From positions 1-64,000 of the forward strand of contig CDMY01000400.1 in the NCBI GenBank assembly GCA_001179505.1: a stretch of 64,000 nucleotides of DNA, read 5' to 3'. This DNA is from Vitrella brassicaformis CCMP3155. Taxonomy: Eukaryota > Protista > Chromerida. The notes beneath the pieces were generated by a model. The model ran no database searches. It worked only from the letters and a program-made list of their open reading frames with translations, and had not been told where the DNA came from. Of the stretch, positions 21,219 through 60,901 are shown in pieces. Every line of letters starts with the position of its first letter. Positions within the stretch are counted from its first letter, which is position 1. The position numbers and the translations under genes are program-made.

Positions 21219-22062
21219 ATGGCGACTGTTCTCATGATGATGATTCTCTGTGTGGTGTCGACCATGGTCGGCACAGAGGCAAGACCCGCACAACAGGTAT
21301 GTCACACACACACACACCGTGACCTATCCACCCACTCATCTAATGCTCTGGTGTCAATGGCTACCTTTGTTCTGTTCAGGTCCGTTTGCGCGGCCTGCAG
21401 GTGTCCCCTCCTGGCAACACGTCGCTGTCTGCGTCAGAATATGAGGCGCTGCTCGCTTCGATGGGGGGCGACACCACTACACAAGTCACCTCACTCTACC
21501 GGTAGACACACACGTCATGCCAACAGGCTGGGATCATCTGACAGGTAATAAGCACATTCCATCTGTGTGTGCGTGCTGAAGGACGTCTGTGGACGGCACC
21601 ACCTATGGCGACCTGCTGGACAATGTGGGCGACGCGAAGCCTCTCGTGGTGGTGGTCAGGAAGGACAAGTATGTCTTCGGCGTCTACGTCAGTGCCGGCA
21701 TCCAGCTGCCCGACGACCCGACCAGCGAGCATTGGTACGGCAGTGATGTGTGGTGGTTCTCACTGGCCGGCCACTTCCCCCAACCGACCAAAATAGACAT
21801 ACCACCATGGGAGCAGTGGATGCGGGTGGCGGGGAGGAAGGCGAATGCAGTGGAGGCGAATATGTACATCGGTAGGTATCTGGTGTTAGGTGAGCAGCGA
21901 GGCTGGCCAGCCGCCGGCATCCGCAGCTGTGAACAGTACACCGACAGCGACTATCTGCCTGAGGGCTACACGGGAGTGAGGGGTGAGTTTGCCGATGCTC
22001 TGATGGGCGGGTCTCGTAACTTTATGGCCGATGAAATAGAGGTGCTGCGTGTGGTGCAGTAG
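21219..22062 (+). CDS. Secreted TLDc-domain protein
   Basis: Exon 1 (21219-21296) encodes a signal peptide; exon 2 starts at 21380 (VRLRGLQVSPPGNTSLSASEYEALL...LYR); exon 3 (21582-22062) reads TSVDGTTYGDLLDNVGDAKPLVVVVRKDKYVFGVY...WWFSLAGHF...GGSRNFMADEIEVL. Confidence 0.9.
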
Positions 22063-28457: not shown

Positions 28458-29619
28458 GGGCCCCCACGGCTGGTTCGCTGACGAGAAGCTGCACTGACGG
28501 CCGGGGGGAAGACTGCCTGCCTGCCTGCCTGCCTGCTGTCTGTAGCGGCGGATATGTATGTGTGTGAATGTCTGCGGCATGTTGGTGTACTGGCTGCACT
28601 GTCTGTGCTGTGGTGTGGTGTGCTGTGCTCTAGCTTAGTAAGTGAGAGTCGTGTGTAGGTAGTTCTTCGTTCGTTCGTTCATTCGCTGGTCGGCCGGCAG
28701 CGCCGCGCCACTCACTGCCACTCAATGTCTCGCGCAGCCTAGTCGGCTGCATCTGCCCTTCGTTGTGTGTGAATGAAACAGCTCTCTCTCTCTGTGTCTC
28801 TCTCTCTGAATAGCTCTCTTTGTGAATACACTCGTACGTTAGTGCTGTGTTCATGTTCGTGCTTTGCCAAGCCGTCGGTGCACCGAGTTCTGACGCGATC
28901 CGACGTGAGCTGAGCGGCTTGTTGTCTGTGCATATATGTGCATGTGTGCTGCGATCTGATCATTGGCTGTATAAATTTGTCGATAGCAACTGACTGCACT
29001 GCACTGCACGCTGATCTGTGCATGTGTACACATTACACATGGGAGGGCGGGGTGGGGGATGGGACGGATAAGAGACCGACGAGAGACACATGCGCACCAC
29101 ATATACATACGTCAAGTGAATGATATCATATGATCTATCCAAATGAAAACGAAATTCGGCACTGAGGCGGCTTGACAGCATTAACACACAAACTTGGCCG
29201 GACATGCGCGCAGACGGCCCGTGCTGTCGTTCCATCCATCCATCGCCTGTTCCATGAAAGGACAGTGAGCGACGCACACAGTACAATATGCGCGTCAGAC
29301 AGGCAGACGGGCGAGTGAGTCAACATCAGCCAGAGGGTGGATCGGATCCATCGCCTCTTCTCTATCCCGTGAGGCGTCATCGCCAGCGCCCCTCGCTGCA
29401 CACGGGACAATAGAGAGACACGTGATAGCGAATCATCCCGAGGCGACGGGTTTATTGTCACAATCCGCCAAACCAAACAGACGTCTCTCTCCCTCCATGC
29501 CTTTCCCTCCTCCTCAGCCCATGTAGCTCTTTGCTGCAGGTCCAGCCGCAACTTTTGTCTGCAGTGGATCTCTGACCTCTGGGGCACCTCTCCACCCCTC
29601 CAGCAGGCACGCGACATCG

Positions 29620-32796: not shown

Positions 32797-35700
32797 ATGG
32801 CGAGGAGGCAGCTCGAGCGCACATACAGGTCTTTCGGGGTGGCATGATGAATGCATCCGCCCGCGTGATGTGATGAATCTGTGGATCTGTTTGTGTGCAG
32901 GGAGGGCATGGCGCCCGAACAGCATATCGATGCTATGCGGGTGCGGACACACAGGCGCACGCACGCAGGAATGACGCACTTTCTTTACGGCGTGTGTGTG
33001 TGTGTGTGCAGGTGAAGCGTAAGGTTGGAGAGCCCCTTGAGAAGCTCAAGGAATTCTCTGAAATCATCAAGATGCTCAACGAGGGGTCTACGGGACTCGC
33101 AGAACGCGTAAGCATGTGCGTGTGCGTGTGTGCGTGTCTTTGGTGGAGATCTACCTGTGTCCAATTGTGCAGATCTATTCCGAGAATGATCATTGTGTCG
33201 AGGAACTGATACAGAACGTCCGGTGAGCTTGAAACCCACACACACGTGTACGCGCATGCGCACGACCGTCGTGTGTGCGGGTGGTGTGACGTATGAGTGG
33301 GCAGCGATGCGCAGCTGAGTCTTTCCGACGGCGAGCTCGGGGACCTGGACATCAGGCTGCTCAAAAGCGACCCGTTCAACGCCATGAATGGTAGACAAAT
33401 ACACGGAGGACGGCCATCTCCCATTTGTGTGTGTGTGTGTGTGTGTGTATGCAGTGAAGTTGATCGCCTCTGAGCAGAAGTGCGCATTCCCCCCAGACAA
33501 GAGTCTGAAGCAGGACAACGGCTGCCTCATCCTCGTAAGTAGCCNNNNNNNNNNNNNNNNNNNNNNNNNNNNNNNNNNNNNNNNNNNNNNNNNNNNNNNN
33601 NNNNNNNNNNNNNNNNNNNNNNNNNNNNNNNNNNNNNNNNNNNNNNNNNNNNNNNNNNNNNNNNNNNNNNNNNNNNNNNNNNNNNNNNNNNNNNNNNNNN
33701 NNNNNNNNNNNNNNNNNNNNNNNNNNNNNNNNNNNNNNNNNNNNNNNNNNNNNNNNNNNNNNNNNNNNNNNNNNNNNNNNNNNNNNNNNNNNNNNNNNNN
33801 NNNNNNNNNNNNNNNNNNNNNNNNNNNNNNNNNNNNNNNNNNNNCATACATTCGTCATGGCTTCAACTCATGGATGGATGGATGGATGGATGGATGCAGT
33901 GCTACAACGAGCGTGGTTTCCGCTGGCAAGATGTCGAGTCCATCTGCTTCATCGGCGAGTCCACCAAAAGGGTACCTACGTACCTCCACGCACGACACAC
34001 ATGACGCGGGCCACGAATGTGTACACGATGGGTATATATGGGTGGTGTGTGGATTGTCCATCGATGTGTGTAGGAGGGGAGCGGCAAGTTCGTTGGCGAG
34101 AAGGGCCAGGGCTTCAAGGCCGTCTTCAACATCGCCAAGTGAGCTGACCGGCCATTCGATTCATGTGTGCGTGGATCCATCCATCCATCCATCCATCCAT
34201 CTGTGTGTGTCTGTGTCCGTGTGTCCGTTGTCAGCTTCGCGTACGTGCTGTCGGACCAGCCTTCGTCGCAGTACTTCTTTCGGCTGCGCGAGCACAAACA
34301 CCCCCTGTGTGGCGTCAAGTACGTATGGCACCACAAACACCATACTCGCCCATGTGTGTGTACACATCCAAGCTGTGTGGGTATGGGCGAAGGTATATCG
34401 TCCCTGATTACCTGCCGCGCGCATCGCTGCCCGAGGAGGTCACGACCATCATGAAGGGGAGGTATGTGCCGATAGCAATCAATGTGTCCATGCACTCACA
34501 AATGAATTTGTGTCGCGTGTGGTGTTGCACATGCATACATTCGTCATGGCTTCAACTCATGGATGGATGGATGGATGGATGGATGCAGTGCTACAACGAG
34601 CGTGGTTTCCGCTGGCAAGATGTCGAGTCCATCTGCTTCATCGGCGAGTCCACCAAAAGGGTACCTACGTACCTCCACGCACGACACACATGACGCGGGC
34701 CACGAATGTGTACACGATGGGTATATATGGGTGGTGTGTGGATTGTCCATCGATGTGTGTAGGAGGGGAGCGGCAAGTTCGTTGGCGAGAAGGGCCAGGG
34801 CTTCAAGGCCGTCTTCAACATCGCCAAGTGAGCTGACCGGCCATTCGATTCATGTGTGCGTGGATCCATCCATCCATCCATCCATCCATCTGTGTGTGTC
34901 TGTGTCCGTGTGTCCGTTGTCAGCTTCGCGTACGTGCTGTCGGACCAGCCTTCGTCGCAGTACTTCTTTCGGCTGCGCGAGCACAAACACCCCCTGTGTG
35001 GCGTCAAGTACGTATGGCACCACAAACACCATACTCGCCCATGTGTGTGTACACATCCAAGCTGTGTGGGTATGGGCGAAGGTATATCGTCCCTGATTAC
35101 CTGCCGCGCGCATCGCTGCCCGAGGAGGTCACGACCATCATGAAGGGGAGGTATGTGCCGATAGCAATCAATGTGTCCATGCACTCACAAATGAATTTGT
35201 GTCGCGTGTGGTGTTGGTGTGTGTGTGTGCGTGGGGGGGGNNNNNNNNNNNNNNNNNNNNNNNNNNNNNNNNNNNNNNNNNNNNNNNNNNNNNNNNNNNN
35301 NNNNNNNNNNNNNNNNNNNNNNNNNNNNNNNNNNNNNNNNNNNNNNNNNNNNNNNNNNNNNNNNNNNNNNNNNNNNNNNNNNNNNNNNNNNNNNNNNNNN
35401 NNNNNNNNNNNNNNNNNNNNNNNNNNNNNNNNNNNNNNNNNNNNNNNNNNNNNNNNNNNNNNNNNNNNNNNNNNNNNNNNNNNNNNNNNNNNNNNNNNNN
35501 NNNNNNNNNNNNNNNNNNNNNNNNNNNNNNNNNNNNNNNNGGGGGGGGGGGGGGGGCATACCTGCACACAGGACGTGTTTGTGTCTGTCGATGAAGAAGG
35601 ACGACCGCATCGACGCGTACGACATCATACACAAGAAGATCGCCGAGGTGAGTGAGTGTGCCGCGCTGCTCCTCCACTCATCCACAGACACGACCATCTG

Positions 35701-38700
35701 TCTGACCATCTTTGTGTATGGCGTGTGGTGTCTTGTGTTGTGATGTGCAGAAGTTGCAGCCCGAGTGTTTCCTCTTCCTCGACAAACCTGACAAGATAAA
35801 AATCACTGGTACCCATCCACACGCGCACACACGCACATAGAGAGAGGGTCAGGGAGAGGGAGAGATACCCACACACGCAGCCATGTAATTGCCCACCCAT
35901 GTGTGTGTGTGTGCAGCTGAGCACAAAACCAAGCGCCGTGTGGAGAAGGTCCTCATGCGCACCGTCACGCAGCACGGCGAGAACTACCAGGTCATCCAAC
36001 TATCCGTCGCAGAAGGTCCGGCCGTCCACACGAATGCACACATCGACGAACGACGGAAGCATCATGTGTTTGTCTCAATGATAACAGGGGGGTCGACGCA
36101 CTCGCGGCGGTACCTGTTGGTGGAACAGGAGAAACAAGTGCCACAGGAAATCAGAGACGTATGCACCCCACCCCACCCCACCCCACCCCCCACACACGAT
36201 CTACAGCAATCGACTGTGTACCCACACCCACGTCTCTGCATGCATGCAGGCGACCGAGACGCGCAAGTCGGCGGAGCGCCGCGCCGTGTGGGTGGCCTTC
36301 AACCTCGACGACAACGATAAACAAAACGGTCGGTTTGTCAACACATTTGCACACGTGTGTGTGCGTGTGGGGGTGCGTGGGTGCGCAGTTGCGGGCTTCC
36401 TGCCCATCGCCAGGCTGCCGTCCCTCTTCACCTACCTGCCCACGGGTATCCCAAACCCTCCCACCAACCCCCAGCAACCTTCCCACAGCACGTCGATACA
36501 CACGTGTGTGTCGATGCAATGCAGCTCAGGAGAGGACGGGCCTGCCTGCGTTGGTCAACGCCGACTGGCGGCTGGCGAGCAACAGGGAGACGCTAGAGTC
36601 GGGATCAGGCGCATGGAACGCGTACGTGGGGACCTATGCTGGGAGAGAGGGAGGGAGGGACGGAGGTGTGTGGGTGGGTGGGCAGGTGGCTGCGTGACGA
36701 GCTGGTCATTCCCACATACGTCGAGGTACGTCTGTGAGTACCTACCTGCGTCTGATGCACACATACGGACGCTCGTGTGTCTGCTCACATAGGCGTTGGG
36801 TGTGGTGTCATCTTTGGCGGCGTTCGCCCACCTGCTGCCGAGGTTCATCCCGCAGCAGGAGGGCTCCCAGCCCAGCAAACACTTTGCAAAAGTGGCCGAA
36901 AACATCATCACACAAGTCACAGACGGGTGGGTATACCGTTCTACGTCTGCAGACATGCCCTCATACGCATGGGTACAGATCGGCTGGATGTCTGTGTGTG
37001 TACGTATGTGTGTGCCAACAGGTCTGACGGCCCTCTCAAGTTGCTGTGGTGCGGCGATTGGGACCAAGACCAGTCCTTGCGCGTATCTGGTATGTCGTGC
37101 CAGCCAGCCAGCCACCCACCCACACAGAGAGGGAGGAAGACAGAGAGGGAGAGAGGGAAACAGAACAGACCAACAGCACGTAACACAACTACGCATCCAT
37201 GTCAGGCGACAAATCGTTCATTCCCGACGTCAAGAAGACCAAGAGGGCCACCGGCGAAGAGGACATCGTGACGGAGTTCAGACAGATGGAGAAGAAACTG
37301 CTACCCAGTAGCCAAATTCCACGCACCCACACACAGGCGAGTATGTGTCTGTGTGCTTGCATTCGTCAGACGATGGCGATTGCGTCTCTTTCGAGCGTGC
37401 GAACGGCATTGTGTGGGAGAAGTACGCTGACTCGTGCGACGACTGGTACACATGCATGTCTGCACCCATCCGGCCATCCATCCATCCATTCATGTGTGTG
37501 TGAGTGTGTGTGGGTGTGTGCAGGATTGACCGTCTGGGTGAGATCGGAGTTGAGGTGCCGGTCAGTGCTAAGAAGTTCGTCGAGTGGCTCCACACAGACA
37601 CCGCCAAGGAGGTAGGGAGATAGTCACACACACACACACACACACACAGAAATGGATCTCTCTCTCTCTCCCTCGCTCTCTCTGCGTTGTAGGGTTTTCT
37701 GCAAGCAGAAGAGGACGTGTGGGTGCAGATCTATGAGTTCTTCTCACTGCAGGTACCCACACGCCACACACATGCATTGAATGGGCCGACCTCATCACTC
37801 TGTCTGCTGTGTGTGTGCATCAATCGATCGACACCTGACAACACAGGCGTTCAAGAGCCGCAACGCCGACTTCAGGAACAACATCGTGCCCATCTTCCCT
37901 CTCAGAACAGTACAATACCATCGCGACACACCCACACACACGTAATTGTGCGCGTACACATATACAGCTTGACGGCGAGATCAAGACCAAGAGTCAGGGC
38001 GTGCTGTTCAAGGACGGCGTGGCACTCAAACCGCCCGTTGACGTAACCATACACCCACATACCACACACGCTCCACATGGCGTCACGTTGCTTTCTCTCT
38101 CTCTCGCTGTGTGTGTAGGGTGTCGGCTGCAGCGTGTTGGCGAAGGAGTGTCTGCCCACCAAGGAGAAATCTGAAGTGGTATGCACGTGTCTGTGTGTCT
38201 TGTCTGTAGGTAACCCCATGACTGTCTCGTGTGCTGCGTGCCTGTGCACACGTGTGTGGTTTCTGCAGGCGCACAGCTTCACGACCGAAGTGCTGGGCGT
38301 CACCGCATTGTACGCAATACGCGCACGCGCACAAGACATACAAGAGAGCACCAACACACATACACGCGCGTGTGTGGATGTGGTTCACTCAGTGACATCC
38401 GGATGTATCTCCTGGATCTGCGCAGCAAGATCGACCAGGCGCACACCGACCCACTCGCACCAGCACGACGCAAGAAGGCCACGTAACTACACACACACAA
38501 CACACACACAGAGAGAGAGAGAAAGAGAGAGTCCACACACGTGTGCATGGGTGGCCTCGCTGTGTGAAAACGCAGTGACGAGCAGAAGTTGGAGCTCACA
38601 CCCGAACAGCGCGCCAAGGTACGTGTAAGTTTCTGTGTGTGAGTGTGTGGATTCATGCTGTGAATGTGTGCGACGTGCGGAATGCGTGCAGCTGTTCTGG

Positions 38701-45893: not shown

Positions 45894-48800
45894 TGTGTGT
45901 GTAGGCATGAGGAGGCGCGTCTGGCGTGTCATGTGAAGGTGCGCGAGTACGTGTGTGCGGATGGATGCGATGCATCCATCTGTGTGAAATTTGTGTGTAT
46001 GTGGTGTGTGCAGATCCGTGCGTTCCACAAGAAGCAGGAGTCTTCTGTGTCTTCCATCACGTCATCCGACTGGTGCCTCTCTAGAGTGCACCCACCCACA
46101 CCGATCCATCCCTCTCTGTTTGTGTGTCCCACCCAACCGTCCGTCCGTCGATTCATCAGGTCTGCGCTGATCACTCTGCTGCCCTTTGGCGGCGTCCACA
46201 TGACCACAGTCGACACACTCGAGGAGAGCGACACGCCGCACGACGACGCTGCTGCCGAGGAAATCGAAAAGGTATGTGTACGTTCGTGGACACCTCCATG
46301 AGTGTGTGTGTGGCGGGTGTCCACAGGTGTGGAAGGACGTCAAGAGAACGAGCAAGAAGGTACTTACTGTGGGTGTGCATGTGTGGGTGCGGGTGTGGGT
46401 GTGGGTGCTGATGTGCATGTGTGTATCTGTGTGCAGGGTGGCAGGAAGCGCCGCAACAACAATGACATGGACGAAGACGACGAAAGCACACAATGGGTAT
46501 GTTTTTCTTTGTATGTCATGTGTACACACGCGAGAGGGATACACCTGTGGCCATCGTGCGTCCGTCTGTGCACATGTATGTCCACATCCACCCACAGGCC
46601 AAGGGCGAGCTGCCGATAGAGTTGGCGAAAGGTATACAAATCAATGCAACCAATGCACTTGGCACATCGGCGCTACTGATGTTTGTTTCGTATACGTGCG
46701 TGCAGACTGCGAGTACATCCATCTGGCCGAGAAACGTATCCCCACACCCTCCACCCACACACACGCGCACACGCATCCATGTCTCTGTCTGTGCGTGCAG
46801 CCGACGAGCCGATGGAGCACTCAGCCACAGTGGAGCCGGCACGTGCCCCTACACACACACACACACCGCACCACACACCACACACCCGCACACGTGCATT
46901 TGTGTGCAGGGTTGTCTATCTCCCGGCGTCCACGTGGCCTTCCACCCACACGCATACGAAGACACCGGCGGCATGCTTGCACGTGTCAAACAAGTCTGTA
47001 GGCCACTGTGCACATACACAGAGAGAAAGAAAGAAAGATATACATGGTCGTCTTCGTCTGTGTGTGTGTGTGTGTGTGTATGTGTGCAGGTGGCCGATGA
47101 CGCTACCGCCTTGACGATAGACCGCCTGTACATTTTCCCACGGATGTGCGCCTTCATGCGCACCCACATAGCTGGCAACACACGCGAGGTGACCCATCAC
47201 CCAATCACCCACACAAACAAACGCACAGATGGATGGATGGATGGATGGACGGACGGATGTGTATGCGCGTGTGTGTCTAGGTGTTGTGTCGGAGCATTGC
47301 CGACCGCTCGGTGCTCATTTCCCATGTGTCGCGTGTCGTCAACGTGCAAGAAACCGACCCATGGGGCATCCCTGACACACAAGACGTACGCACGCACACA
47401 CGCTCTTGAACCGATCAACGTGTGTGTGGATGGGTGCACCAGGCGATGGACACCGATGAGGCTGCGGCCGACGAGTACTTCTGCCGATACAAGATTGACC
47501 GCCTCGCCACTCAAACCATGCACAACGGTACCTTACACCAAGACCCATACACGCACACACACACACACACACAAAATGTTCCGTTGCTCATGTGGGCATC
47601 TGTGGACGCGTGTGCAGGTCTGGTGACGTACAGCGTGTCGGTGTCGCCGCTAATCGAGTCGCCGAAGCGGCCGCTGTTCGACTACAACCTCTTCGCACAG
47701 CAGATGGACAAACGGTCGGTAACACCATGCACATGGCCCGGCCATACACCCACACAGAGTGTGTGTGTTGTCTGTGTGGATGTGCATGCGTCAGGTGTCG
47801 CTGGACGGTGGGCGATCTCTTCGCCGGTGGCGGCGCTGCCGCACTGGGCCTCTGGCAGGCCGGCATCCGCACCTCATGGGCCATCGAAAAGGTACGCAAC
47901 CACCCACAAACCCCTCTCTCTCTCCACACACAAAGGAGGGTGTGTGCAGGATTCGGTGGCTCATGCGTTGTTCAAAGCCAACATGAACGAGCGATACGCA
48001 CACACAGGAGGAGATGCGGACCTCTCGCCGGCCCCGCCTGCGTGTGATGTGCACGATCTCGACGTGTACGAGGTGCTCAGGGGCATTATCCATGGCAAAG
48101 GTAACACTTGAATGCACACGCGAAGAGAGAGGGAGGGGTGTGTGTATGCCCTATGTGTGTGTGTGGTGTGTGGATGGATGTGAGCAGCTGGGTGCCCCCT
48201 GCCGTATGCGACTCGCGTGTTGGTGGCCACGAGCACATCGCTCAACATGGGCAACGACGGTACACACACACACACACACACACAACGGACATGGACAGAG
48301 AGAGAGAGACATTGATGCAAGTGAATGTGTGTATGTGTGTGGGTGTGTCTGTGTGCAGCATCGCGTCTGCGCGCGCGTCAGAGTGACGTGGTGCATGCCA
48401 CCCTCGCCGCGGCCAAGATCCTCCAGCCGGAATATGTGGTGCTTGGTACGTTTGTCTGCTGTATACGTGACACATCCATCCATCCATCCATGCATCCATG
48501 CATCCATGCGTCTCTTCCCGTGTGAGTGCAGAGTCCCCCCTGTGTGTGCTGTCGTCTTCCGCCGACACGGCCACACTCATGGCCTTCTACAGCCTCGCCA
48601 GCGGCTTCCTGGACGCAGGATACGCATATAATATCCAGGTGCCCACACCGTGTTTGCACACGTCGGTTTGTCCATCCATGGGTGTGCATTTGTGTGTGCA
48701 TTCAGGCTGTCCGTGCGTGTGACTATGGGGTGCCCAACACCCGCACCCACCTCATGTGTGTCGCCAGACGAGCCGACGTGACTATGACATCAACGCAAGA

Positions 48801-51427
48801 GCTGTTTCCGAAGCCGATTGACGCACGTACGCACACACACACACACGGCAAGGACGTATCAACACACAGATGTGATGGGTGTTGTGTTGGTCTGTGTGCG
48901 GGTGGGTGGGATGGCCAGGTGTGTGTGTGCGTGAGGCCATCGGGGATCTGCCGTCGATCAGCGGGCCGCTGGCGTGTCACGAAAACGGGGGCTACAGGAC
49001 CTACGCGCGGAAAGGCAAGCGCTCTCGAGACGCCAATTCATGGACTGATGAGTCTGTTTGTACGGGTGTGTGTGTGTGTGAACAGGCACGCTGTGTGTCT
49101 ACCAGAAGGACATGCGCGACATCGTCAACAACCGACCACTCAGGAACCATGTAGGCGTGCATGGATTGTGTCCGCACCCACCCACACCCCCACACACACA
49201 CGCATGGGACAGACGCACCTCGTTGACGTGTCATGCAGGTGTTCGTGTCATCGGATGAGCACCATCACCCGTCGCAATCGTCGCAATCGTCGCCGTCGGC
49301 GTGCGAGTGGCAGCAGATCTACACCCACACAAACGTCATCACGATGCACCCCGACCCAAAGCAGAAGAGGCCTCTCACCGTGTAAGCACCCATCCATCCA
49401 CCCATCACACAGAGAGAGAGAGAGAGAGAGAGGTGGTCCCCCCCGCATGTGTGTTGTGTTGTGTGTGTGGCAGCCGTGAGTACGGTCGTCTTTGGTCGTT
49501 CCCCGACTCGTTCTTCTTCTCTGCCGGCATCACACAGCACCAGATCAACATCAGTATGCGCACTCACAAAGTGTGGTGTGCGCCGGTTATATACTCTGTG
49601 TGTGTGTGTGTGTGTGTTCAGTTGTGGCATCCACGCCTCCCCTGGTGCTCAAGCACATCGCCATGGCTCTCACTGACGGCGACGTGTATGTGCCCCCCCC
49701 CCCCCCCCCCNNNNNNNNNNNNNNNNNNNNNNNNNNNNNNNNNNNNNNNNNNNNNNNNNNNNNNNNNNNNNNNNNNNNNNNNNNNNNNNNNNNNNNNNNN
49801 NNNNNNNNNNNNNNNNNNNNNNNNNNNNNNNNNNNNNNNNNNNNNNNNNNNNNNNNNNNNNNNNNNNNNNNNNNNNNNNNNNNNNNNNNNNNNNNNNNNN
49901 NNNNNNNNNNNNNNNNNNNNNNNNNNNNNNNNNNNNNNNNNNNNNNNNNNNNNNNNNNNNNNNNNNNNNNNNNNNNNNNNNNNNNNNNNNNNNNNNNNNN
50001 NNNNNNNNNNCCCCCCCCCCCCCCCCACACACACACACACAATGATGCAGAGATGTGTGTGCATGGGTATGGGGCGTCTATCTACGTCGGTGTGTGTGTG
50101 TGCAGGCCTCCCGCGGTAGACGATGCCCACCCCGCCCCACCCGCACCAGCTGCGGCTGTCTGTGTTTGTGTAGCTGACGGCAAGGACGACAAGAAGAGGG
50201 GCGGTGGCAGGAAGAGACCATTGGAGGAAGGTATGTGTCCGCACATCCACAATCCGAATCATTGTATGCCCCTGTTTGTGTGTGTGTGTGTGTGTGTCCG
50301 CCTGTCTGGGCGCACTCAGCCGATGAGAAGAAGGACCATAGGGAGGGGGGTGGCGGCGGCAGTGGCGGTAGCAAGAAGGCAGCGTCGGATAAGAATGAAG
50401 GTCGGTACCCCATACACCGTACACACGCCAAACGGTTCACTCAATGCATATAGGACGGCAATATGGGTGCGTGCAGATGACGTTGATGTTGATGTTGTTG
50501 ATGACGACGAGCCCAAGCGGCCAATCAGGGCCAGGAAGAACAACAAGCGCAAGCTGCCCGACAGCGACATAGAGGAGGAGGACGGTACGCACACACGCAT
50601 CAGAGAGAGAAGAGACACATGTGTTTTCATTCCTGCAGATGAGCACGAGAAGAAGGAGGCGGAGAAGGACAGCGAGAAGAAGAAGGACAAGGACAAGGAG
50701 ACACCCGTGGCCGCCGCTGCTGCAGCAGCTGCTGCTGCACCCGTCCCTGCTGCTGCTGGTGCTGCTTCTGCTGCTGCATCGGGGTGAGTACCACATTGGT
50801 GTCCAAATGCAGCACCATCTGTGTGCACGTCATGGATGGATGGATGAGTGCAGGTCAGCTGCCGATGGCGATGACGGCGTCCATGATGAGGACGGGTTGA
50901 GGATGTACGTGGACATCGTCCCGGACGGCCAACGCCACGGCGGCCATCAAGACCAAGCAAAGGAGGAAGAGGCAGCTGACAGCACACAGGACAAGAAGGA
51001 CAACAAGGGCAAAGACACACAGAAGGTACCCACCCACCCCCACAGAGACACGTGCCCCATCCGTACTTGTTCGTGCCTTTTTGTGTGCCGCATTCACACA
51101 TAGGCCGACAGCAAGAAGGTCTCTCCCAAGCCGAAAGCCAAGTCGGCCCCGAAGGCCAAGCCGCAGGCTGAGGCCAAGAAGAAGACCTCGGGCACCAAAC
51201 CGGACGCCAAGCGGCAGAAAAAGGAGAAGGAGGAGAGAGAGGGAGACCACAAACGGGGTGAGTGCTGCGCCCCACATGAGATGCGTGTATTGACGGCGGA
51301 CACATGTTTGCCTTTGCGTGTGGTGTGTGTTGGGCGGGTGGATGCGCTGTGCATGTGTTGTGTTGTGTTGTGTGTGTGATCAGGCCAGGTGCAGAGCAGC
51401 ATCACGCAGTTCTTCGGCAAGAAGTAG
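32797..51427 (+). CDS. Giant multidomain protein: Sacsin/NO-VEIN-type GHKL ATPase, long middle region, 2x FN3, BAH, degenerate C5 DNA-methyltransferase fold, charged tail, PIP box
   Basis: About 100 short exons joined in phase by a manual walk (GT-AG plus two GC-AG introns; gaps at 33545, 35241 and 49711 unresolved). GHKL: EELIQNVRDA, YNERGF..ICFIGESTK, VGEKGQGFKAVF, LQPECFLFL, GLPALVNADWRLASNRE..WN. FN3: FEVSWTDCPGADKYMLQ..YELFVTAL and TIKLAWDRVEGAEGYDVYV..VKIRAF..SDWS. MTase: DLFAGGG, PEYVVLESP, DYGVPNTR, VREAIGDLP, LTVREYGRLWSFPDSF. Ends QSSITQFFGKK*. Confidence 0.8.
33845..35217 (+). repeat. Apparently identical 689-bp tandem duplication of four GHKL exons (probably an assembly artefact)
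   Basis: The unit starting at 33845 recurs at 34534 (offset 689). Both outer ends abut N gaps. Splicing both copies would join phase 2 to phase 0 and shift the frame. Confidence 0.85.
51392..51415 (+). other. Canonical PCNA-interacting (PIP) box QSSITQFF at the C-terminus of the giant protein
   Basis: Last exon (51384-51427) encodes GQVQSSITQFFGKK*, which matches Q-x-x-[ILM]-x-x-F-F. Confidence 0.8.
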
Positions 51428-52851: not shown

Positions 52852-52993
52852 GATCGTCCAGACCTCCTTGCCCGGAAAGGGAAGGAGAGGAAGGAGAAAG
52901 GTGCTGAGCTCGTCAGCAGCCTTAGGACTTTCCGTGAAACCGTGCTCAGGCGCTAAGCTCGCAGTGAAATTGGAAGCTTGAGCCGAGACACCA

Positions 52994-53793
52994 ATGGTAA
53001 GAACACACCCCCCACTCCAGAGCAGCAGGCAGCCAGCTGCAGGAAGAAACACGAAAACAGGCGGCACAGATCAGATCTGACAAACGAGGCAGTTGCAGGC
53101 AGGAGGAGTCCCGCCGAGGCAGTCTGCCAGTGTCGCTTCCCTCACACGCTTCACGACACACCACGCACACACACACCACTCACGCACGGGTGTTTGATGG
53201 TCACCTGCCCTCCCCCTCTCACTCCATCCGCTGTGCTCTCTCTGTGCGTGTGTGGTTCAGGTTGGCAAGACCAAGGCGCACGAGTTGCGCAACTCGAGCG
53301 AGAAGGAGCTTTTGAAGAAGCTCGAGGAGTACCAGAATGAGCTCGCCTCTCTCAGGGTCGCCAAGGTCACTGGAGGTGCCGCTTCGAAACTCGCCAAGAT
53401 CAAGGTACACAACACACGCACACCCAGTCAGTACGGAAGGAAGGAGGCGTGTATGCGTCTATGCGTGTGTGTGTGGTGCAGATCGTGCGCAAGTCGATTG
53501 CGCGGATCCTGACGGTGTACAATCAGAAGCGGAAGGAGGAGGCGCGCAAGGAGTGGGACAAGAAGAAGTACAAGCCCATCGACATCAGGCAGAAGAAGAC
53601 GCGCGCCAAGAGACGGAAAATCCCTGCCGGATTCGCTAAACCAACCGTCAAGTGAGTGGTCGACACAACACAGCCATGGTTGTGCCCGCCTCATGTGCTC
53701 TTGGTGTGTTGCATTTCGTGTGCGTGTGTGTCCTGCAGGGAGACCAAGAAGCAGATGAACATCAAGACTCGCCGCTATGCTGTCAAGGCATGA
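52994..53793 (+). CDS. RPL35: 60S ribosomal protein L35 (uL29)
   Basis: ATG-only first exon, then [48 protein letters not shown]|[15 protein letters not shown]...[16 protein letters not shown]...|[17 protein letters not shown]. Confidence 0.97.
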
Positions 53794-56124
53794 GCCGTCT
53801 CTGAGTGGTGCTTGCAGAGAATGCATGTGGGCGGCTCTCATGTGCGGACGGTTTGGCGACCTCTTGTTGGGTGGCGATGTGACGACACTTGCGTGGTCGG
53901 TGTGATGTGATGTGAAGGGCTGACATCTCCTGCATGCGCACGCACGCACTCCCAGACACCGAAAAGCGATTTCACGGTGCCAATCAGTCATGGGAGTCCA
54001 TCACACATACATGCACACGCACGTTCACATTCATGCACAACAAACTCATGACATGCAAGGCAGCTACAGTCATCACGCAGCACACACATGTGTCTGCGAC
54101 CCCTTCGTTCGTTCGCCAACCACCGCCCGCCCACTCATCTGTACACACACGGGCACTCTCTCGCTCAAGGTAGTGCATGTGAAACGCACCACGGTCGACT
54201 GAAAACGGTAGATTCGCCGTCTCGACACCGAGGCCAAGTGGTTGAAAGGCAGAGTCCCCTGCCCATCAAACACTCGGCCTCCGGCTCGACACGCAAAACC
54301 CACCAGCCATCAGCCACCCATCAGAACGACAGTCCATCAGAAGGAGAGGGAGGAAAAAGCGTTCGCAGGACCATACCTCAGCCCGTCAGCACCCAGCCAG
54401 CCGTATGCACAAATGACTCTCTCGCTCTCTCGCTCTCTTCTGTCGCCACCCAACCCAATGAAAGACGGCAGGAAACACTCGACTCACTCGGTGTATCGTG
54501 CCCTCATGAATGCGGCTGCTCCCCGTGTCTCATGCTCTCACCGCACACGACCTCAGCCACGCCAGCGCGCATTGGCTCGACCAAGGACATGTACTACCAA
54601 GATCTGAGTCACAGGCAGCAGTCGCACCGAGCCTCCATGGGACAAACAAGACGAGATGATCATGCAGTTGCATCAGCAGCAGCGGTAGTGAAAGGGAGAG
54701 GGGAGATAGCCAGTTGCAGGCAGGCAGGCAGGCCCTCCCTGGTGAGGTGAAACATAACCAACATCGGAACAATTTCACCATTCATGCGCGTGCAAAAATG
54801 CGCCCTTCATGTGATGTCAAAACTGACCCACCCAGCCATTCCCCTCTCCCATACGACGATACCCACACGCACACTCTCCCACTCATATAACTCATGGATT
54901 GGTGCGTTGAGAGAGGCGGGCCTGCTGTCTGTCTGCCTGCCTGTCTGGTCGTGTCTGTCTGGAAGTGCATCAGGTTTCAGGTAACGGGTGGTAGTGGTAG
55001 GAGTGTGTTGATCGGGTAGCAAAAACACGTCCGCCGGATGCTTGAGGTGAGCTTATCACAGTCGCCGCGCCAACCCACGCCACGCAGTCTCTATCTCTCT
55101 CTCCCATCCCCTGCACCTGGCCTTCTGTACATTATACGCTTGTATACACACACAGACAGACACTCAGTCAGACAGACAGACAGACTGACCAACACGCGAC
55201 ACAACGCAGACCCAGACGCACACAGCAGACAGGCCGATGGAGCGAACGAAGGAAGGAGCCATCACACCTTCAAAAATCCNNNNNNNNNNNNNNNNNNNNN
55301 NNNNNNNNNNNNNNNNNNNNNNNNNNNNNNNNNNNNNNNNNNNNNNNNNNNNNNNNNNNNNNNNNNNNNNNNNNNNNNNNNNNNNNNNNNNNNNNNNNNN
55401 NNNNNNNNNNNNNNNNNNNNNNNNNNNNNNNNNNNNNNNNNNNNNNNNNNNNNNNNNNNNNNNNNNNNNNNNNNNNNNNNNNNNNNNNNNNNNNNNNNNN
55501 NNNNNNNNNNNNNNNNNNNNNNNNNNNNNNNNNNNNNNNNNNNNNNNNNNNNNNNNNNNNNNNNNNNNNNNNNNNNNNNAACACACAAGACACACATGAA
55601 TTGCATCCCAATCGTCAAAAACTCATGTAGCACGCATCCGTGACATCCATCCATCCAGCAGCTACTCATGGCACAAGTGAACGAAATCAGAGAGAGGAGG
55701 GAAGCCGAATTCCTGTCTGAACGTTCGTGCGTGTGTCTCCCTTCCTGCCCATTCCCCGCAACTGCATAAAGGCCGTTTGTGTGCCTGTCTGATCGGCCGC
55801 TTGACGACCGACCGATGGTGAATGAAAATGGCCGTCATGATGGTGGTGAAAACACATCACACACACACGGACACACGAAGAACCTCTCTCACACTCACTC
55901 TCTCACGTACGCAGGTCGGTCACTTTGTGAGCGGGGCCCTTCTCCCCCTCTCTGTCTCTCACTGCACTACACACATGCAACAAAATGCACGCACCGCTCA
56001 CACGCACGTCGTGACACGATAGAGACAAAGAAAATGCATTACATACGACAACGGTGTGTACGGTATGGAATAAAGAAAACTCTCCCATGCAGGCAGCCGT
56101 GTATGAGCGAGTGTAGTCGGTTAG

Positions 56125-57958
56125 CTAGTTAGTGTCCGGGCGGGAAGGGGTTGGGGTCGTTCCTCTGCATGCCCGCAAACGTGTGGTTGACCTCACGGTG
56201 GTGGGACTCGTCAGCTGCAACGGCACCCAAAACACCCCCCAAAACAGCCATCCATCCAATCTGTCTGTCTGTCTGTCTGCGCGTCCCCGCCTGTCTGCCT
56301 GTGTGCGGTTTTACCTCTGATGGCGAGCCAGACGTCGCGGAGCATGGCCTTCTTGCCCAGCTGCCAGTACGCGCGCGCCACGGGTGGTGCGGGCATGTGT
56401 GTGAAGAGGGGCAGCTTCCCCTTGTCCATCTCTTCTATCAGGTGCGTGTACGTCTTGACGGCCTCCTCCTCAAGATATCCCACAAACCTGACACACCAAC
56501 GCCACACACACACGTGCGTGGGGGGGTATGGGTAGATGAGATGAGTGAGAAGGTGTCTGAGTCTAGTCTCCATCTCTCTGAGGCATCCCTCCGTACCTGT
56601 GTGCGAATCTGGGTGAGAGGAGGTATGAGCATGTGAAGAATGCGAGGAAGACGCCCTGTGCGAAGAGCACGGTGGACCGGAAGATGGGGCCGGGCTTGCG
56701 CAGCACCAACGCCGTCATCAGATGCATCCGCTCGTTCTCGGCCTCTGAAGAAGCAGACAGATACCGTACACAGTGGTGGATGGTGTGAGAGAGTGGCTGT
56801 GTGGTTGTCTCACAAACCTTCGAGCAGTGTGTGGATCCATCCGTAGTCCCTCTCCATGCGGCGGAGGGAGTTGAGGTGACGCACCATCGCACCCACCATG
56901 CCTGGCACATACACACACCAACGACGCAGATGAGTGTTCCATGCTCTGTGTGTGCGTGTGTGCGTGTCGAGGACTCACCAGGAACGCCTGCGACGGTCTC
57001 GAGGAAGACGACCCGGTTGAGCCATCCCTTCTCGTCAACCAAACCAAACTTGTAACCTGCAAACACGCACATCAAACGAATGCAGGTCGAGGGTATTCTG
57101 GTTGGTGTGTGGGTCACTCTCTCTCTCACCCGATGCGGTGTCGAAGACGAATCTGAGTGCCGACACGGACGCAAAGGCCATCCGGTCGGTAATGTTCAGT
57201 GGCTTGTAATGGGTTATCCTGACAACGCAACACAACACAGCACACAAACCGCACAATCAACACGCGGCCTTACGTGCGTAGCCAGGTGTGTGTTGAGCTC
57301 ACGAGACAGTGTTTGCGGAGTTTTCGTCCCAGATGGGGTGTGGCAGCGAGTAGGACGCCTTCTGCTGTCTCTGCTCCTCAACCACCTCACCGGTCAACGG
57401 ATGCGCCTGCAGGGGGACGCCAAGAAACACAGATGCACATCCACAGGTCGCTCTCCACGTGTGCGTTCTGTGGTGAGAGCTATGTGCTTACCAGAGCGTC
57501 CTTCCTGAAGTGCGGCGTGTCCGCCGCACCCTCTGCGATGCGCTCTGCAGCACGCTCAGCAGCTGCCAACGACACAAGACACACAACAGACAGACACACA
57601 CACGTACAGCCAACCTTCTGACTTGCTTCTCTCGAGACCTCCCTCCCCCCTCTCTCCGTGTCGCCCTTGGTGTGTGCCTGCCTGAGGTACCAGGTGAGCT
57701 GCGGTGGAGCTGGTGCTCGTGTCCCTCGCTGTCCTTGAGCATCTCGCCCCTCCCGCTGTGCTCCCCGCCCAGCACACCAGTGCTGGCCGTCCTCACCCTA
57801 CCCACCACCAGAGGGCTCGCCCGCACAGCCTGGGAGCCCGTCTGACGCACCAGGGACGACGCAGCCATGCTCTGAAGACGCACGAGGGCCGCTGCCGACA
57901 TGTGAGTGCCCATCTGCCCGCCGAGCGAGAGGGCGACGCGAGACGAAGTTGCCAGCAT
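56125..57958 (-). CDS. AOX: Mitochondrial alternative oxidase
   Basis: Transit-peptide-like N-terminus; di-iron motifs [19 protein letters not shown]|[22 protein letters not shown] and IR|[11 protein letters not shown]. Confidence 0.95.
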
Positions 57959-58332: not shown

Positions 58333-60901
58333 ATGTCGGCCCCTCCCGCCCCTCCCGCAGCCGCCGCCGTCAAGGATGTGTACGAGTACATCCCGGAACC
58401 AAAGCCAGCCCCTGGCACAACCGGTCAGTCACTCAGTCAGTCGAGCCATGCATTCGTTGTGTGTCCGAGTGGGCATGCATCCCTCTCTGTGTCTGTGTGT
58501 CTGCATGCAGGCGTGCCGAATGTGCCGTCGTCAGGGCTGGGCTACACTCTGCGTGGCGCGGGAGCTCGCGAGAAGGACAGGGACAAGGAGGAACTCGACG
58601 TCGGTACGCCAACCGAAACCGCGCGCGATTGTCCATTATGGGCGCGTCATTCATGCACCATTCAGCGTCGTTGAAGCCCGAAAAGGCGTACGAGACGTTT
58701 AAGGGCAAGAAGTATGAGGTCACCATTCCCCAGGCGGGAGCCATGGGCACATTCCTGAGACAGCAGCCAAGGTGTGCGTACACCCACACACCAGATATAG
58801 CCACATGAATGCACGTGTGTGTGTATGTGTTGTAGGAGTGAGTATGAGAGTGTGGGCGGGCTGGGTGGTGCGCTCAAGGACTTCGAAACGCCGCTGCAGA
58901 GGACACAGAGACTGCAGGCTGAGGTATGCCCGACCCCCACCCACATGCAGCTCCATGCCTTTCCCACGTTCATCCCCCTTGTGTGTGTGCAGGTGTCCGA
59001 GTTGCTCGAGTACGTCACGAACGAGATCAACCTCGGCCGCGGCAACGAGCTGAGGGCGCTCTTCGAGGGAGCGGGGGACCCTGCCGCCATCAAGGTACAT
59101 AGATCGCCCCACCACACAATCGGTGTATGCACTCTGTTTGACTGTGTATTGGCTCAGGAGGAGTTGAAGACTCTGGAGGGGCAGCTGTCGACCCTGCTCA
59201 ACGACGAAAAAGTCAGTCAGCCGAGACGAAAAAAAGAGAACACACACAAACCGAAAAACGCGACAATATGTGCTTGAGCCGGTCCGTGTATGTGTGTATC
59301 TGTGTATGCGCGTGCGTGACCAGGTGAAGGCTGAGCTGATCGGCAGCAGTGACCCCAGCTACAAACTGCCTGCCGTGAGGCAACACACGCACAACCACAA
59401 CCACAACCACTTCACATACGTGTGTGTATGTGTGTGTGTGTGTGTGTAGGGTGAGGCCGACCTGTTCAACAGCGTCATGCAGCAGCTCAGCGCACTCAAG
59501 ACCACTTCTGCCGCCACAGCCGACAAAGACAAAGAGAAGAAGAAGGACGGTGAGGGACAATGCACTGACACACACACGGGTGCTCTCATGCACGTCACGG
59601 CTGTGTGTCTGTGTGTGTAGGTGAGAGCCGGATGGTGTATGAGGTGTACTACGACCCCAACGAGCGGCCGCTGGTTGAAACAAGCAAACTGATCGGGTGG
59701 GTCGAATAAGAGGGAGTATCTCGCAGATGCACGGATGGCCGGCCATGCGTCCATCTGTGTGTGGGGTGGTGGTGCATGTGCATCCATCTGTGTGACACTC
59801 ACGATCAGGTTGGAGAGTCGTTTGTCCGAGTTGGAGAAGCAGATCGGGGTGGAGGCACAGTCGCAACTGCCCTTCCCAGACGTACAGGTAGGTACGCATA
59901 GATCCATCCCATACCCACCAGCCTGTTCGTGTGAAGTGTGTGCGCGCGGGCGTGTGTGCGTGTGTGCGTGTGTGTGTATCAGAGCGGCATCTACGACCTG
60001 AATGAGCGGCTGAGTCTGCTCGACGCCAACAAACTCGACGCCATCGGCAGACGCACACAGGTACGCAGAGGCGGACGCCACACACACACACACACATTGC
60101 TTTCATGTATGCGTCGTGTGTGTGCAGGCGCTGATGAGTGAGCTTGAGATGGTGTTGCGGAAGAAGGCCGAGATCACCAGCGCCGCGCTGACGGACGACG
60201 ACCAAAAGGTACTTGCTGCCATGGCGGCACACCTGCCTGCATCTGATATGATATGTATGTCGGCGTGTTGGTGCCTGTCTCGGTGTGTGTGTGCAGGTGC
60301 AGGAGCTGTTCCTCATGAGCCAGCGGTGGAAGATTGCCACGTGAGCCAATGCATCCTGTCTGTGTGATTGCGCGCGCGCCCTCTGTACGTGTTGATTGCG
60401 GGGGTGCGTGTGTGTGTGTGTGTGTAGTGCTGGTCTGCCGTATATCGTAGTCCGGCTGAAGTCGCTCAAGGCCCTGCACCAACACTCGGGATCATTCGCC
60501 ACACGCATTTCAGGTGAGTCGGGTCGGTCGCCGCACATGCGTACGAACAGCCGACCTGTGTGCATGTGTGTGTGTGCATGTGTGTGTGTGGTTGTGTGTG
60601 TAGTGTTGGAGTCGAACCAGACTGAGCTGCAGAAGCAGCTGGACGCCACGTCGGCCGCACTCACCACTGTCAGCAAATCCCTCCAGGTACACACACACAC
60701 ACACACACACACGCACGCACAGAGAGAGAGAGAGAGAGGGAGGGACAGAGGGAGAGCGGGAGAGAGAGCGACTAGACACACACGGGAGACATCCCCCCCC
60801 TCGTGTGTGTGTGTGTGTGTTGCTAGGATTCGCTCAAGACCTTCACCGAGAACATCGACAAAATGCACACCAGGATCGCAGAGCTGCAGAAGAAGAAGTG
60901 A
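58333..60901 (+). CDS. DCTN2: Dynactin subunit 2 (p50/dynamitin)
   Basis: DVYE near the N-terminus, ETPLQRTQRLQAE, LESRLSELEKQIG, LSLLDANKLDAI, LPYIVVRLKSLKALH, TFTENIDKMHTRI. Coiled-coil exons join in phase. Confidence 0.88.

What the first reader, a model, noticed from the sequence alone, without database searches (positions are those of the whole stretch)
47795..49683. The methyltransferase domain keeps the SAM-binding motif but has lost its catalytic motifs (pseudo-DNMT)
Seen: motif I DLFAGGG (47814-47834) is intact, as are the scaffold motifs VREAIGDLP and LTVREYGRLWSFPDSF. Motif IV reads VLVATSTSLNMGN instead of GGPPCQGFSGMN (exon 48188-48259, no Pro-Cys), motif VI is ESP instead of ENV, motif VIII is YGVPNTRTH instead of YGVPQxRxR, and motif X is VASTPP instead of GNAVPP. 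Established: the motif IV Cys, motif VI Glu-Asn and motif VIII Arg pair are needed for C5 methyl transfer; DNMT3L is a known non-catalytic example. Inference: coordinated loss of catalysis with a retained fold and open frame suggests selection for SAM or DNA binding, or for scaffolding.
Basis: partly seen in the sequence, partly recalled or inferred. Interest (0 to 1): 0.75.

Follow-up and report, generated by a model that had tools for sequence, protein, structure and literature searches.

The report
Catalytically dead DNA-methyltransferase domain, Vitrella giant ATPase
The motif losses are real: this is the C-terminal cytosine-methyltransferase-like domain of a 2,949-residue sacsin-type ATPase protein of the alga Vitrella brassicaformis. 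It keeps most cofactor-binding motifs but has lost the catalytic cysteine and most other catalytic residues, so it probably no longer methylates DNA; that it still has a function is inferred, not shown.

Summary
Observation confirmed. The window is Vitrella brassicaformis CCMP3155 scaffold CDMY01000400.1, positions 1-64000; it is not human.

- **Exon model.** Eleven short exons (47795-49685, + strand) encode a C5-DNA-methyltransferase-like domain. All ten introns keep the frame (nine GT-AG, one GC-AG). Every exon shows coding codon usage only in the frame used.
- **Motifs kept.** Motifs I-III (DLFAGGG, WAIE, LDVY) and IX (REYGRLWSFPDSF).
- **Motifs lost.** Motif IV Pro-Cys reads Thr-Ser, ENV reads ESP, QxRxR reads NTRTH, and GN of motif X reads VA.
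- **No rescuing exon.** No credible alternative exon supplies a Pro-Cys.

Interpretation partly supported.

- **Family.** This is not a DNMT1/MET1-type protein. The public annotation places the domain at the C-terminus of a 2,949-aa product with Pfam SACS (sacsin/GHL ATPase) plus DNA_methylase.
- **Closest relative seen.** A Vitrella paralogue, CEM15752 (called "DNMT4" by Funabiki et al. 2023), keeps SPCQGFS and FENV.
- **C-terminus.** The protein ends in a PIP-box-like QSSITQFFGKK.

Most likely this is a non-catalytic DNA- or SAM-binding module, possibly working with the active paralogue. Selection is not demonstrated: I found no orthologue, no dN/dS and no transcript.

The parts
47795..47891 (+). 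Exon E1: motif I (DLFAGGG) and motif II (WAIE)
   Evidence: PF00145 E=0.011, profile positions 2-29.
47950..48100 (+). Exon E2: region between motifs II and IV, with a roughly 16-aa insertion and motif III (LDVY)
   Evidence: By-eye match DVY..L to CEM15752.
48188..48259 (+). Exon E3: degenerate motif IV. GCPLPYATRVLVA is kept; the catalytic loop reads TSTSLNMGN in place of SSPCQGFSTIN
   Evidence: The other frame that contains 'GAPC' has codon LLR -14.5 and lacks PCQ.
48359..48445 (+). Exon E4: motif V region, ending LQPEYVVL
   Evidence: LQPE(H/Y)V is shared with CEM15752.
48532..48638 (+). Exon E5: starts with split codon g|ag = Glu, then SP (ENV -> ESP); motif VII region
48706..48826 (+). 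Exon E6: motif VIII, YGVPNTRTH
   Evidence: PF00145 E=0.065, profile positions 142-179. Aligns to M.HhaI 153-187.
48919..49014 (+). Exon E7: VREAIGDLPSI, start of the short target-recognition region; GC-AG intron follows
   Evidence: GT donors further on would give introns under 35 nt.
49086..49150 (+). Exon E8: TLCVYQKDMRDIVNNRPLRNH
49239..49381 (+). Exon E9: target-recognition region with an in-frame low-complexity run (HHHPSQSSQSSPS), ending KRPLT
49474..49553 (+). Exon E10: motif IX, REYGRLWSFPDSF
49622..49685 (+). Exon E11: degenerate motif X (VASTPP in place of GNAVPP) and the last helix; donor GTATGT at 49686
49711..50010 (.). 300-N scaffold gap inside the intron after E11, flanked by poly-C
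50107..51257 (+). Charged, Lys-rich C-terminal tail exons. Exact internal boundaries were only partly modelled
51384..51427 (+). Last exon: (G)QVQSSITQFFGKK-stop, a PIP-box-like motif at the extreme C-terminus
   Evidence: The TAG at 51425-51427 coincides with the annotated gene end. Chance expectation 1.9e-4.
33000..35800 (+). Approximate N-terminal sacsin/GHL-ATPase region of the same annotated gene. Contains an exact 689-bp duplicate between two gaps
   Evidence: Precomputed PF25794 on the product. Exon-level PF25794 E=0.13 at 33867-33986. Duplicate shown.

Best explanation
The region encodes the C-terminal domain of one very large annotated Vitrella brassicaformis protein of 2,949 aa. Its architecture is an N-terminal sacsin/NOV/Tiamat-type GHL ATPase, a long middle part, a C5-DNA-methyltransferase-fold domain, a Lys-rich tail and a C-terminal PIP-like box.

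The methyltransferase fold and the cofactor-side motifs I-III and IX are kept. The chemistry of C5 methyl transfer is not: the nucleophile Cys is Ser, its Pro is Thr, the Gln-x-Phe-Ser of the catalytic loop is gone, ENV is ESP, the second Arg of motif VIII is His, and the Gly-Asn of motif X is Val-Ala.

It therefore most likely cannot methylate cytosine. I infer that it serves as a non-catalytic DNA- and/or SAM-binding or regulatory module of the ATPase. It may act together with the motif-intact paralogue CEM15752, since GHL ATPases work as dimers; this would resemble DNMT3L with DNMT3A or DRM3 with DRM2. It may be brought to replication forks through PCNA.

Shown: sequence, exon model, motif states, annotated architecture. 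Inferred: loss of activity, retained function, partnership, PCNA tethering.
For: - Origin: the window is identical to CDMY01000400.1.
- Architecture: the annotated product has 2,949 aa with PF25794 SACS and PF00145 DNA_methylase on record.
- Family match: exon-wise PF00145 hits to E1 and E6 fall in the right order and spacing. E6 aligns to the HhaI motif VIII region.
- Gene model: ten frame-preserving introns. Coding codon usage appears in the chosen frame only, for every exon.
- No usable alternative exon supplies Pro-Cys.
- Paralogue: the published alignment of CEM15752 shows about 50% identity (15 of 30) in the 30 residues before the catalytic loop, but 0 of 8 in the loop itself (by eye).
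- Uneven loss: family-invariant residues on the cofactor side are kept 5 of 5, those on the catalytic side 2 of 12 (Fisher p=0.003, residue list chosen after the fact).
- C-terminus: the PIP-like box ends exactly at the annotated stop.
- Precedent: Tiamat-like GHL ATPases commonly carry catalytically dead nucleic-acid-binding folds as swapped C-terminal modules (preprint 10.64898/2026.09.30.754977).
Against: - No orthologue or close relative of exon E6 turned up among 1.84 billion representative proteins, so there is no dN/dS.
- No transcript: exon E2 and the last exon are absent from the JGI collection, which does hold a spliced Vitrella RPL35 cDNA.
- Motif X belongs to the cofactor pocket and is degenerate.
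- The target-recognition region carries a microsatellite-like insertion, a sign of relaxed constraint.
- The comparison with CEM15752 is by eye from a published alignment, not computed.
- The joined domain was not scanned or folded.
- The open frame could be maintained only for the sake of the downstream tail.
Confidence: 0.55

Rival explanations
1. The domain is a relic under relaxed selection. The gene is functional through its ATPase and its C-terminal tail and PIP-like box. The methyltransferase domain is merely carried along, and only stops and frameshifts are purged because they would cut off the tail.
For: The catalytic loop is fully degenerate. There is a low-complexity insertion in E9. 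Motif X is lost. The downstream tail with the PIP-like box gives an independent reason to keep the frame. No orthologue was found.
Against: The hydrophobic core strands and motifs I-III and IX remain recognisable. Losses are concentrated on catalytic residues rather than spread evenly. All ten splice sites and coding codon usage are intact in every exon.
Confidence: 0.25
2. The whole gene is silent or a young pseudogene, and the annotation is only an ab initio prediction.
For: Two probes of the gene (E2 as protein, the last exon as exact DNA) found nothing in a collection that contains a Vitrella transcriptome. A survey of MMETSP transcriptomes reported no DNMT4 outside diatoms (PMC9998398). 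An exact 689-bp duplicate between gaps lies inside the gene.
Against: About 18 kb of gene with dozens of short exons shows no frame break in the 15 exons checked, and coding codon bias is retained. Long low-abundance mRNAs are often missing from transcriptome assemblies. The duplicate looks like a scaffolding artefact.
Confidence: 0.1
3. The domain is still an enzyme with non-canonical chemistry. It might use another nucleophile, for example the Cys four residues after the motif VI Glu (ESPLC), as RNA m5C methyltransferases use a motif VI Cys. Or it might act on another substrate.
For: Motifs I-III, the motif VI Glu and the first motif VIII Arg are kept. A Cys lies at position +4 from the Glu.
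Against: No precedent in DNMT-type enzymes that I know of. Motif X and the whole catalytic loop are degenerate. No relatives share this arrangement.
Confidence: 0.07
4. Gene-model artefact: the true mRNA uses another exon or frame that restores Pro-Cys.
For: Frame +1 of E3 reads GAPCRM.
Against: That frame has codon LLR -14.5 against +5.1 for the chosen frame. It can be reached only through weak acceptors inside a GA/GT microsatellite, and it lacks the Gln-x-Phe-Ser context. None of the 90 frame-compatible alternative exons has PCQ. No PC[QN]x[FLM]S or ENV string occurs on the + strand anywhere in the gene.
Confidence: 0.03

Closest known systems
Vitrella brassicaformis CEM15752 (called DNMT4 by Funabiki et al. 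2023, eLife 12:RP86721; methyltransferase domain at residues 2269-2619)
   Same: Same genome. The methyltransferase domain lies at a similar distance from the end of a very long protein. Lineage-specific strings are shared: G(Y/C)PLP(F/Y)xTR(F/V)L(T/V)A, LQPE(H/Y)V, GY(G/A)(F/Y), (I/V)R(D/E)AI(S/G)DLP. Identity is about 30-50% in ungapped blocks, by eye.
   Different: CEM15752 keeps SPCQGFS, FENV and RxR; the window protein has TSTSLNMG, LESP and RTH. CEM15752 is not encoded in this window. Whether it also carries the sacsin-type ATPase was not checked.
DNMT3L (mammals) and DRM3 (Arabidopsis): catalytically inactive DNMT paralogues that assist active ones
   Same: A methyltransferase fold with lost catalytic residues, an intact reading frame, and an active paralogue in the same genome.
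   Different: A different DNMT branch. From my own knowledge, DNMT3L has also lost its cofactor-binding motifs, whereas motifs I-III are kept here. This domain is embedded in a 2,949-aa ATPase fusion. No interaction data exist.
DNMT1 / MET1 / DIM-2
   Same: The same broad DNMT1-like superfamily of domains. The LP-x-x-(hydrophobic strand) lead-in to motif IV and the motif IX FPD(S/T)(F/Y) are similar. DNMT1 also has a PCNA-binding PIP box (QTTITSHF, from memory).
   Different: No RFTS, CXXC or BAH hit. The target-recognition region is about 135 aa, against the much longer one of DNMT1. The PIP-like box here is C-terminal. The catalytic motifs are lost.
Tiamat / NO VEIN / sacsin GHL ATPases with swapped C-terminal modules (bioRxiv 10.64898/2026.09.30.754977)
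   Same: A sacsin-type ATPase at the N-terminus of a very long protein, with a nucleic-acid-related module at the C-terminus. Several described types carry catalytically dead folds (HNH-like, Schlafen-like).
   Different: No type with a cytosine-methyltransferase module is listed there. I did not test for DUF3684 or the PD-(D/E)xK nuclease.
M.HhaI C81S/C81G mutants
   Same: The nucleophile Cys is replaced while the fold is kept. From my own knowledge, such mutants lose methyl transfer but still bind DNA.
   Different: Those are laboratory single mutants. Here many further catalytic-side residues are also changed.

Membership tests
C5 cytosine DNA methyltransferase fold (Pfam PF00145) | Significant match to the family profile | tested here: met
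   Precomputed PF00145 on the annotated 2,949-aa product, unmarked (E<=1e-5). Exon by exon the hits are below threshold: E1 E=0.011 and E6 E=0.065, collinear. NCBIfam found nothing.
C5 cytosine DNA methyltransferase fold (Pfam PF00145) | Motif I FxGxG plus motif II acidic residue and motif III Asp (cofactor side) | tested here: met
   DLFAGGG, WAIE and LDVY are present.
Active C5 cytosine DNA methyltransferase | Motif IV Pro-Cys nucleophile | tested here: not met
   Thr-Ser at the aligned position. No credible alternative exon.
Active C5 cytosine DNA methyltransferase | Motif VI Glu-Asn-Val | tested here: not met
   Glu-Ser-Pro; only the Glu is kept.
Active C5 cytosine DNA methyltransferase | Motif VIII Arg pair | tested here: not met
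   NTRTH: the first Arg is kept, the second is His (HhaI alignment).
Active C5 cytosine DNA methyltransferase | Motif X Gly-Asn | tested here: not met
   Val-Ala-Ser-Thr-Pro-Pro.
Active C5 cytosine DNA methyltransferase | Methyl transfer to cytosine C5 | not testable with these tools
   Needs an enzyme assay.
DNMT1 / MET1 / DIM-2 | N-terminal RFTS, CXXC and/or BAH domains | tested here: not met
   No such family among the hits on record for the product. Nothing on upstream exon stretches. A BAH-like look of exons 47090-47714 is by eye only.
DNMT1 / MET1 / DIM-2 | Long target-recognition region between motifs VIII and IX | tested here: not met
   About 135 aa here, against the much longer human DNMT1 stretch in the published alignment. 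Short like the diatom DNMT4 OEU08290.
DNMT4-like clade (CEM15752 plus diatom DNMT4) | Groups with the clade in a phylogeny | not tested
   Only a by-eye comparison with the published alignment.
Non-catalytic DNMT paralogues (DNMT3L / DRM3 kind) | Catalytic residues lost, frame intact, active paralogue in the same genome | tested here: met
   (intact frame). (CEM15752 keeps PC and ENV).
Non-catalytic DNMT paralogues (DNMT3L / DRM3 kind) | Binds and stimulates or regulates the active enzyme | not testable with these tools
   Needs co-purification and activity assays.
Sacsin / NOV / Tiamat-like GHL ATPases | Sacsin-type ATPase domain | tested here: met
   PF25794 on record for the product. Weak exon-level hit, E=0.13, at 33867-33986.
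Sacsin / NOV / Tiamat-like GHL ATPases | DUF3684 middle region and PD-(D/E)xK nuclease | not tested
   Not among the hits on record. Exons are too short for exon-wise detection.
PIP-box PCNA partners | Q-x-x-[ILM]-x-x-[FY]-[FY] | tested here: met
   QSSITQFF in the last 11 residues. Four matches in 128,000 six-frame residues, so 1.9e-4 is expected at a given C-terminus. PCNA binding itself is untested.

The most novel reading that the evidence does not exclude
Chromerid algae may possess a previously undescribed kind of methylation or genome-defence machine. It would be a sacsin/NOV/Tiamat-type GHL ATPase whose C-terminal effector is a cytosine-methyltransferase module. It would exist as an active/dead paralogue pair (CEM15752 and this gene) and be tethered to the replication fork by a C-terminal PIP box. 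That would be a replication-coupled system distinct from DNMT1-UHRF1 and from the SNF2-fused DNMT5.
Probability: 0.2. Interest if true: 0.8.

Novelty: new variant of a known kind. Interest (0 to 1): 0.5.

Why it matters
Catalytically dead methyltransferase paralogues such as DNMT3L and DRM3 are key regulators of DNA methylation in animals and plants. This would be an example outside those lineages, from a different DNMT branch and inside a sacsin-type ATPase fusion.

Two published DNMT surveys bear on this. One lists only CEM15752 and a DNMT2 for Vitrella. The other reports no DNMT4 outside diatoms in the MMETSP transcriptomes. The preprint on Tiamat-like ATPases lists no methyltransferase fusion.

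If the protein is functional, it links a family of ATPases now tied to antiviral defence with cytosine methylation and with PCNA, in the closest photosynthetic relatives of apicomplexan parasites. If it is only a decaying domain, it is an ordinary by-product of gene duplication.

Tried and rejected
- **Exon-wise Pfam.** E3-E5 and E7-E10 gave no hit. NCBIfam gave nothing.
- **Exon-wise PDB.** E1 matched only designed armadillo repeats, which is spurious. E7 and E10 matched nothing.
- **Big representative search with E6.** Seven hits, all repeat proteins and none a methyltransferase. I think the gene's own annotated product was missed because a paralogue represents its 50% cluster.
- **Word search with the E6 region.** Candidates of 174-555 aa only; nothing found.
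- **JGI metagenome/transcriptome collection.** E2 as protein and the last exon as exact DNA both found nothing.
- **Upstream exons against Pfam.** Only chance-level hits; BAH is not supported.
- **Paralogous methyltransferase exons inside the window.** None. The CEM15752 motif strings are absent from all six frames.
- **Rfam and tRNA scans.** Empty.
- **Contig CDMY01000515.1 (L001).** It proved to be a paralogous copy of the peptidase locus, not this one.
- **Alternative Pro-Cys exon.** Rejected.
- **Left out.** The joined spliced protein was not built, searched or folded.

Full report
**Origin of the window**

The sequence is eukaryotic and intron-dense. It has seven runs of exactly 300 N, and short introns full of (CA)n and (GGAT)n.

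A neighbouring ribosomal protein L35 gene identified the source. Its product P0128 is Vitrella brassicaformis CCMP3155 L35. The record that carries it, CDMY01000400.1 (86,598 bp, assembly GCA_001179505.1), is identical to the window over 42994-63793 with the same coordinates. The window is therefore positions 1-64000 of that scaffold. It is a chromerid alga, not human. An earlier lead, a peptidase paralogue on CDMY01000515.1, proved to be a different, duplicated locus.

**Checking the observation**

I built the exon model from splice signals and frames:

| Exon | Coordinates |
|---|---|
| E1 | 47795-47891 |
| E2 | 47950-48100 |
| E3 | 48188-48259 |
| E4 | 48359-48445 |
| E5 | 48532-48638 |
| E6 | 48706-48826 |
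| E7 | 48919-49014 |
| E8 | 49086-49150 |
| E9 | 49239-49381 |
| E10 | 49474-49553 |
| E11 | 49622-49685 |

- The ten introns are 58-99 nt long. Nine are GT-AG and one is GC-AG (AAG|GCAAGC), and the codon phases chain without a break.
- A codon-usage log-likelihood ratio trained on other genes of the window is positive in the chosen frame and negative in both other frames. This holds for all eleven exons and for four upstream exons. The introns score at or below zero.
- E11 joins the next exon in frame across the 300-N gap, so no exon need be hidden there.

**Alternative exons**

I listed all 90 stop-free, phase-compatible exons that could lie between E2 and E4. The only ones with a Pro-Cys read GAPCRMRLA. 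These start at weak acceptors inside a microsatellite, use the frame with codon score -14.5, and lack the Gln-x-Phe-Ser context. No PC[QN]x[FLM]S and no ENV occurs on the + strand of the gene.

**Is it a methyltransferase domain?**

Exon by exon, Pfam gives only weak hits to PF00145. E1 scores E=0.011 at profile positions 2-29, and E6 scores E=0.065 at positions 142-179. They fall in the right order and spacing. E6 aligns to M.HhaI residues 153-187.

Independent support comes from the public annotation. The gene covering the finding ends at 51427, encodes 2,949 residues, and has precomputed Pfam hits PF25794 (sacsin domain) and PF00145 at E<=1e-5.

The spacing of the motifs also fits HhaI (HhaI residue numbers are from my own knowledge):
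- Nucleophile position to motif VI Glu: 37-38 residues, against 38 in HhaI.
- Motif VI Glu to motif VIII: 46 residues, against 42 in HhaI.

**State of the motifs**

Kept:
- Motif I, DLFAGGG.
- The motif II Glu, in WAIE.
- The motif III Asp, in LDVY.
- The motif VI Glu.
- The first Arg of motif VIII.
- Motif IX, REYGRLWSFPDSF.

Lost:
- Pro-Cys-Gln-x-Phe-Ser of motif IV reads Thr-Ser-Leu-Asn-Met-Gly.
- Asn-Val of motif VI reads Ser-Pro.
- The second Arg of motif VIII reads His.
- Gly-Asn of motif X reads Val-Ala.

Motif X contributes to the cofactor pocket, so "SAM binding retained" is plausible but not secure.

**What family?**

Funabiki et al. (eLife 2023, PMC10538959) list two DNMTs for Vitrella: CEM15752 as "DNMT4" and a DNMT2. 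They list no DNMT1.

Their alignment shows that CEM15752 shares lineage-specific strings with the window protein. By eye, the two are identical at 15 of the 30 residues that precede the catalytic loop. They are identical at 0 of 8 inside the loop, where CEM15752 has SPCQGFST. Other ungapped blocks give about 30-37% identity.

CEM15752 is not encoded in this window, so it is a paralogue. The diatom DNMT4 OEU08290 has a similarly short target-recognition region. DNMT1-type accessory domains are not on record and were not found.

**Is loss concentrated on catalysis?**

I took a small list of family-invariant residues, chosen after seeing the data. Five of five on the cofactor side are kept, against two of twelve on the catalytic side (Fisher p=0.003). 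With the 15/30 against 0/8 contrast around motif IV, this argues against uniform neutral decay. It is not a substitute for dN/dS.

**Context**

- The gene starts near 33 kb with sacsin/GHL-ATPase exons.
- It ends with a Lys-rich tail and the last exon 51384-51427, which encodes (G)QVQSSITQFFGKK-stop. QSSITQFF fits the PIP-box consensus. The stop coincides with the annotated gene end. The pattern occurs four times in 128,000 six-frame residues, so 1.9e-4 is expected at a given C-terminus.
- A 2026 preprint on Tiamat, NO VEIN and sacsin describes this ATPase family as swapping C-terminal effector modules, several of them catalytically dead. It lists no methyltransferase fusion.

**Relatives and expression**

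- The word search with the E6 region returned nothing in its length range.
- The JGI collection holds a spliced Vitrella L35 cDNA (L003, 99.9-100% identical). It holds neither E2 nor the last exon of this gene.
- A survey of MMETSP transcriptomes found no DNMT4 outside diatoms (PMC9998398).

So there is no orthologue, no dN/dS and no transcript evidence. This is the main weakness of any claim of function.

**Verdict**

Loss of C5-methyltransferase chemistry is well supported (about 0.8). A retained non-catalytic role is plausible but unproven (about 0.55). The main rival is a relic domain kept in frame only because the tail and the PIP-like box lie downstream (0.25).

Noticed in passing
window 51384-51427 (+): The annotated gene's last exon encodes QVQSSITQFFGKK-stop. 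This is a canonical PIP-box pattern at the extreme C-terminus, after a Lys-rich tail (51104-51257), and suggests PCNA binding.
   Followed up: partly
window 33845-34533 and 34534-35222 (+): An exact 689-bp tandem duplicate lies between two 300-N gaps, inside the sacsin/ATPase part of the same gene. It is probably a scaffolding artefact and would inflate the annotated 2,949-aa product.
   Followed up: partly
window 33000-35800 (+): The N-terminal exons of the gene encode a sacsin/NOV/Tiamat-type GHL ATPase (ELIQN-type N box, GxGFK box). A fusion of this ATPase with a cytosine-methyltransferase module is not among the published Tiamat-like types.
   Followed up: partly
window 49262-49300 (+), exon E9: An in-frame hexanucleotide-like repeat (TCGCAA/TCGCCG) gives HPSQSSQSSPS inside the target-recognition region. 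This is a sign of relaxed constraint in that loop.
   Followed up: no
window 21234-22371 and 27154-28908; L001 (CDMY01000515.1:1-11229): A segmental duplicate of the subtilisin-like peptidase gene (91-97% identical) and of a TLD-domain gene (81%, inverted) lies on another scaffold.
   Followed up: partly
window 52951-55279 (+); L003: The ribosomal protein L35 gene has a spliced cDNA in JGI record 3300017148. The cDNA runs 1.5 kb past the stop, up to the scaffold gap, and carries a second called ORF of 220 aa.
   Followed up: no
window 49690-49710 and 50011-50027, and other gaps: The 300-N gap at 49711-50010 is flanked by poly-C; other gaps seen in ORF translations also abut proline or glycine runs, suggesting assembly breaks at homopolymers.
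   Followed up: no
window 56129-57958 (-) and 58333-60901 (+): The annotated neighbours are an alternative oxidase (PF01786) and a dynamitin (PF04912). They are unrelated to the finding.
   Followed up: no
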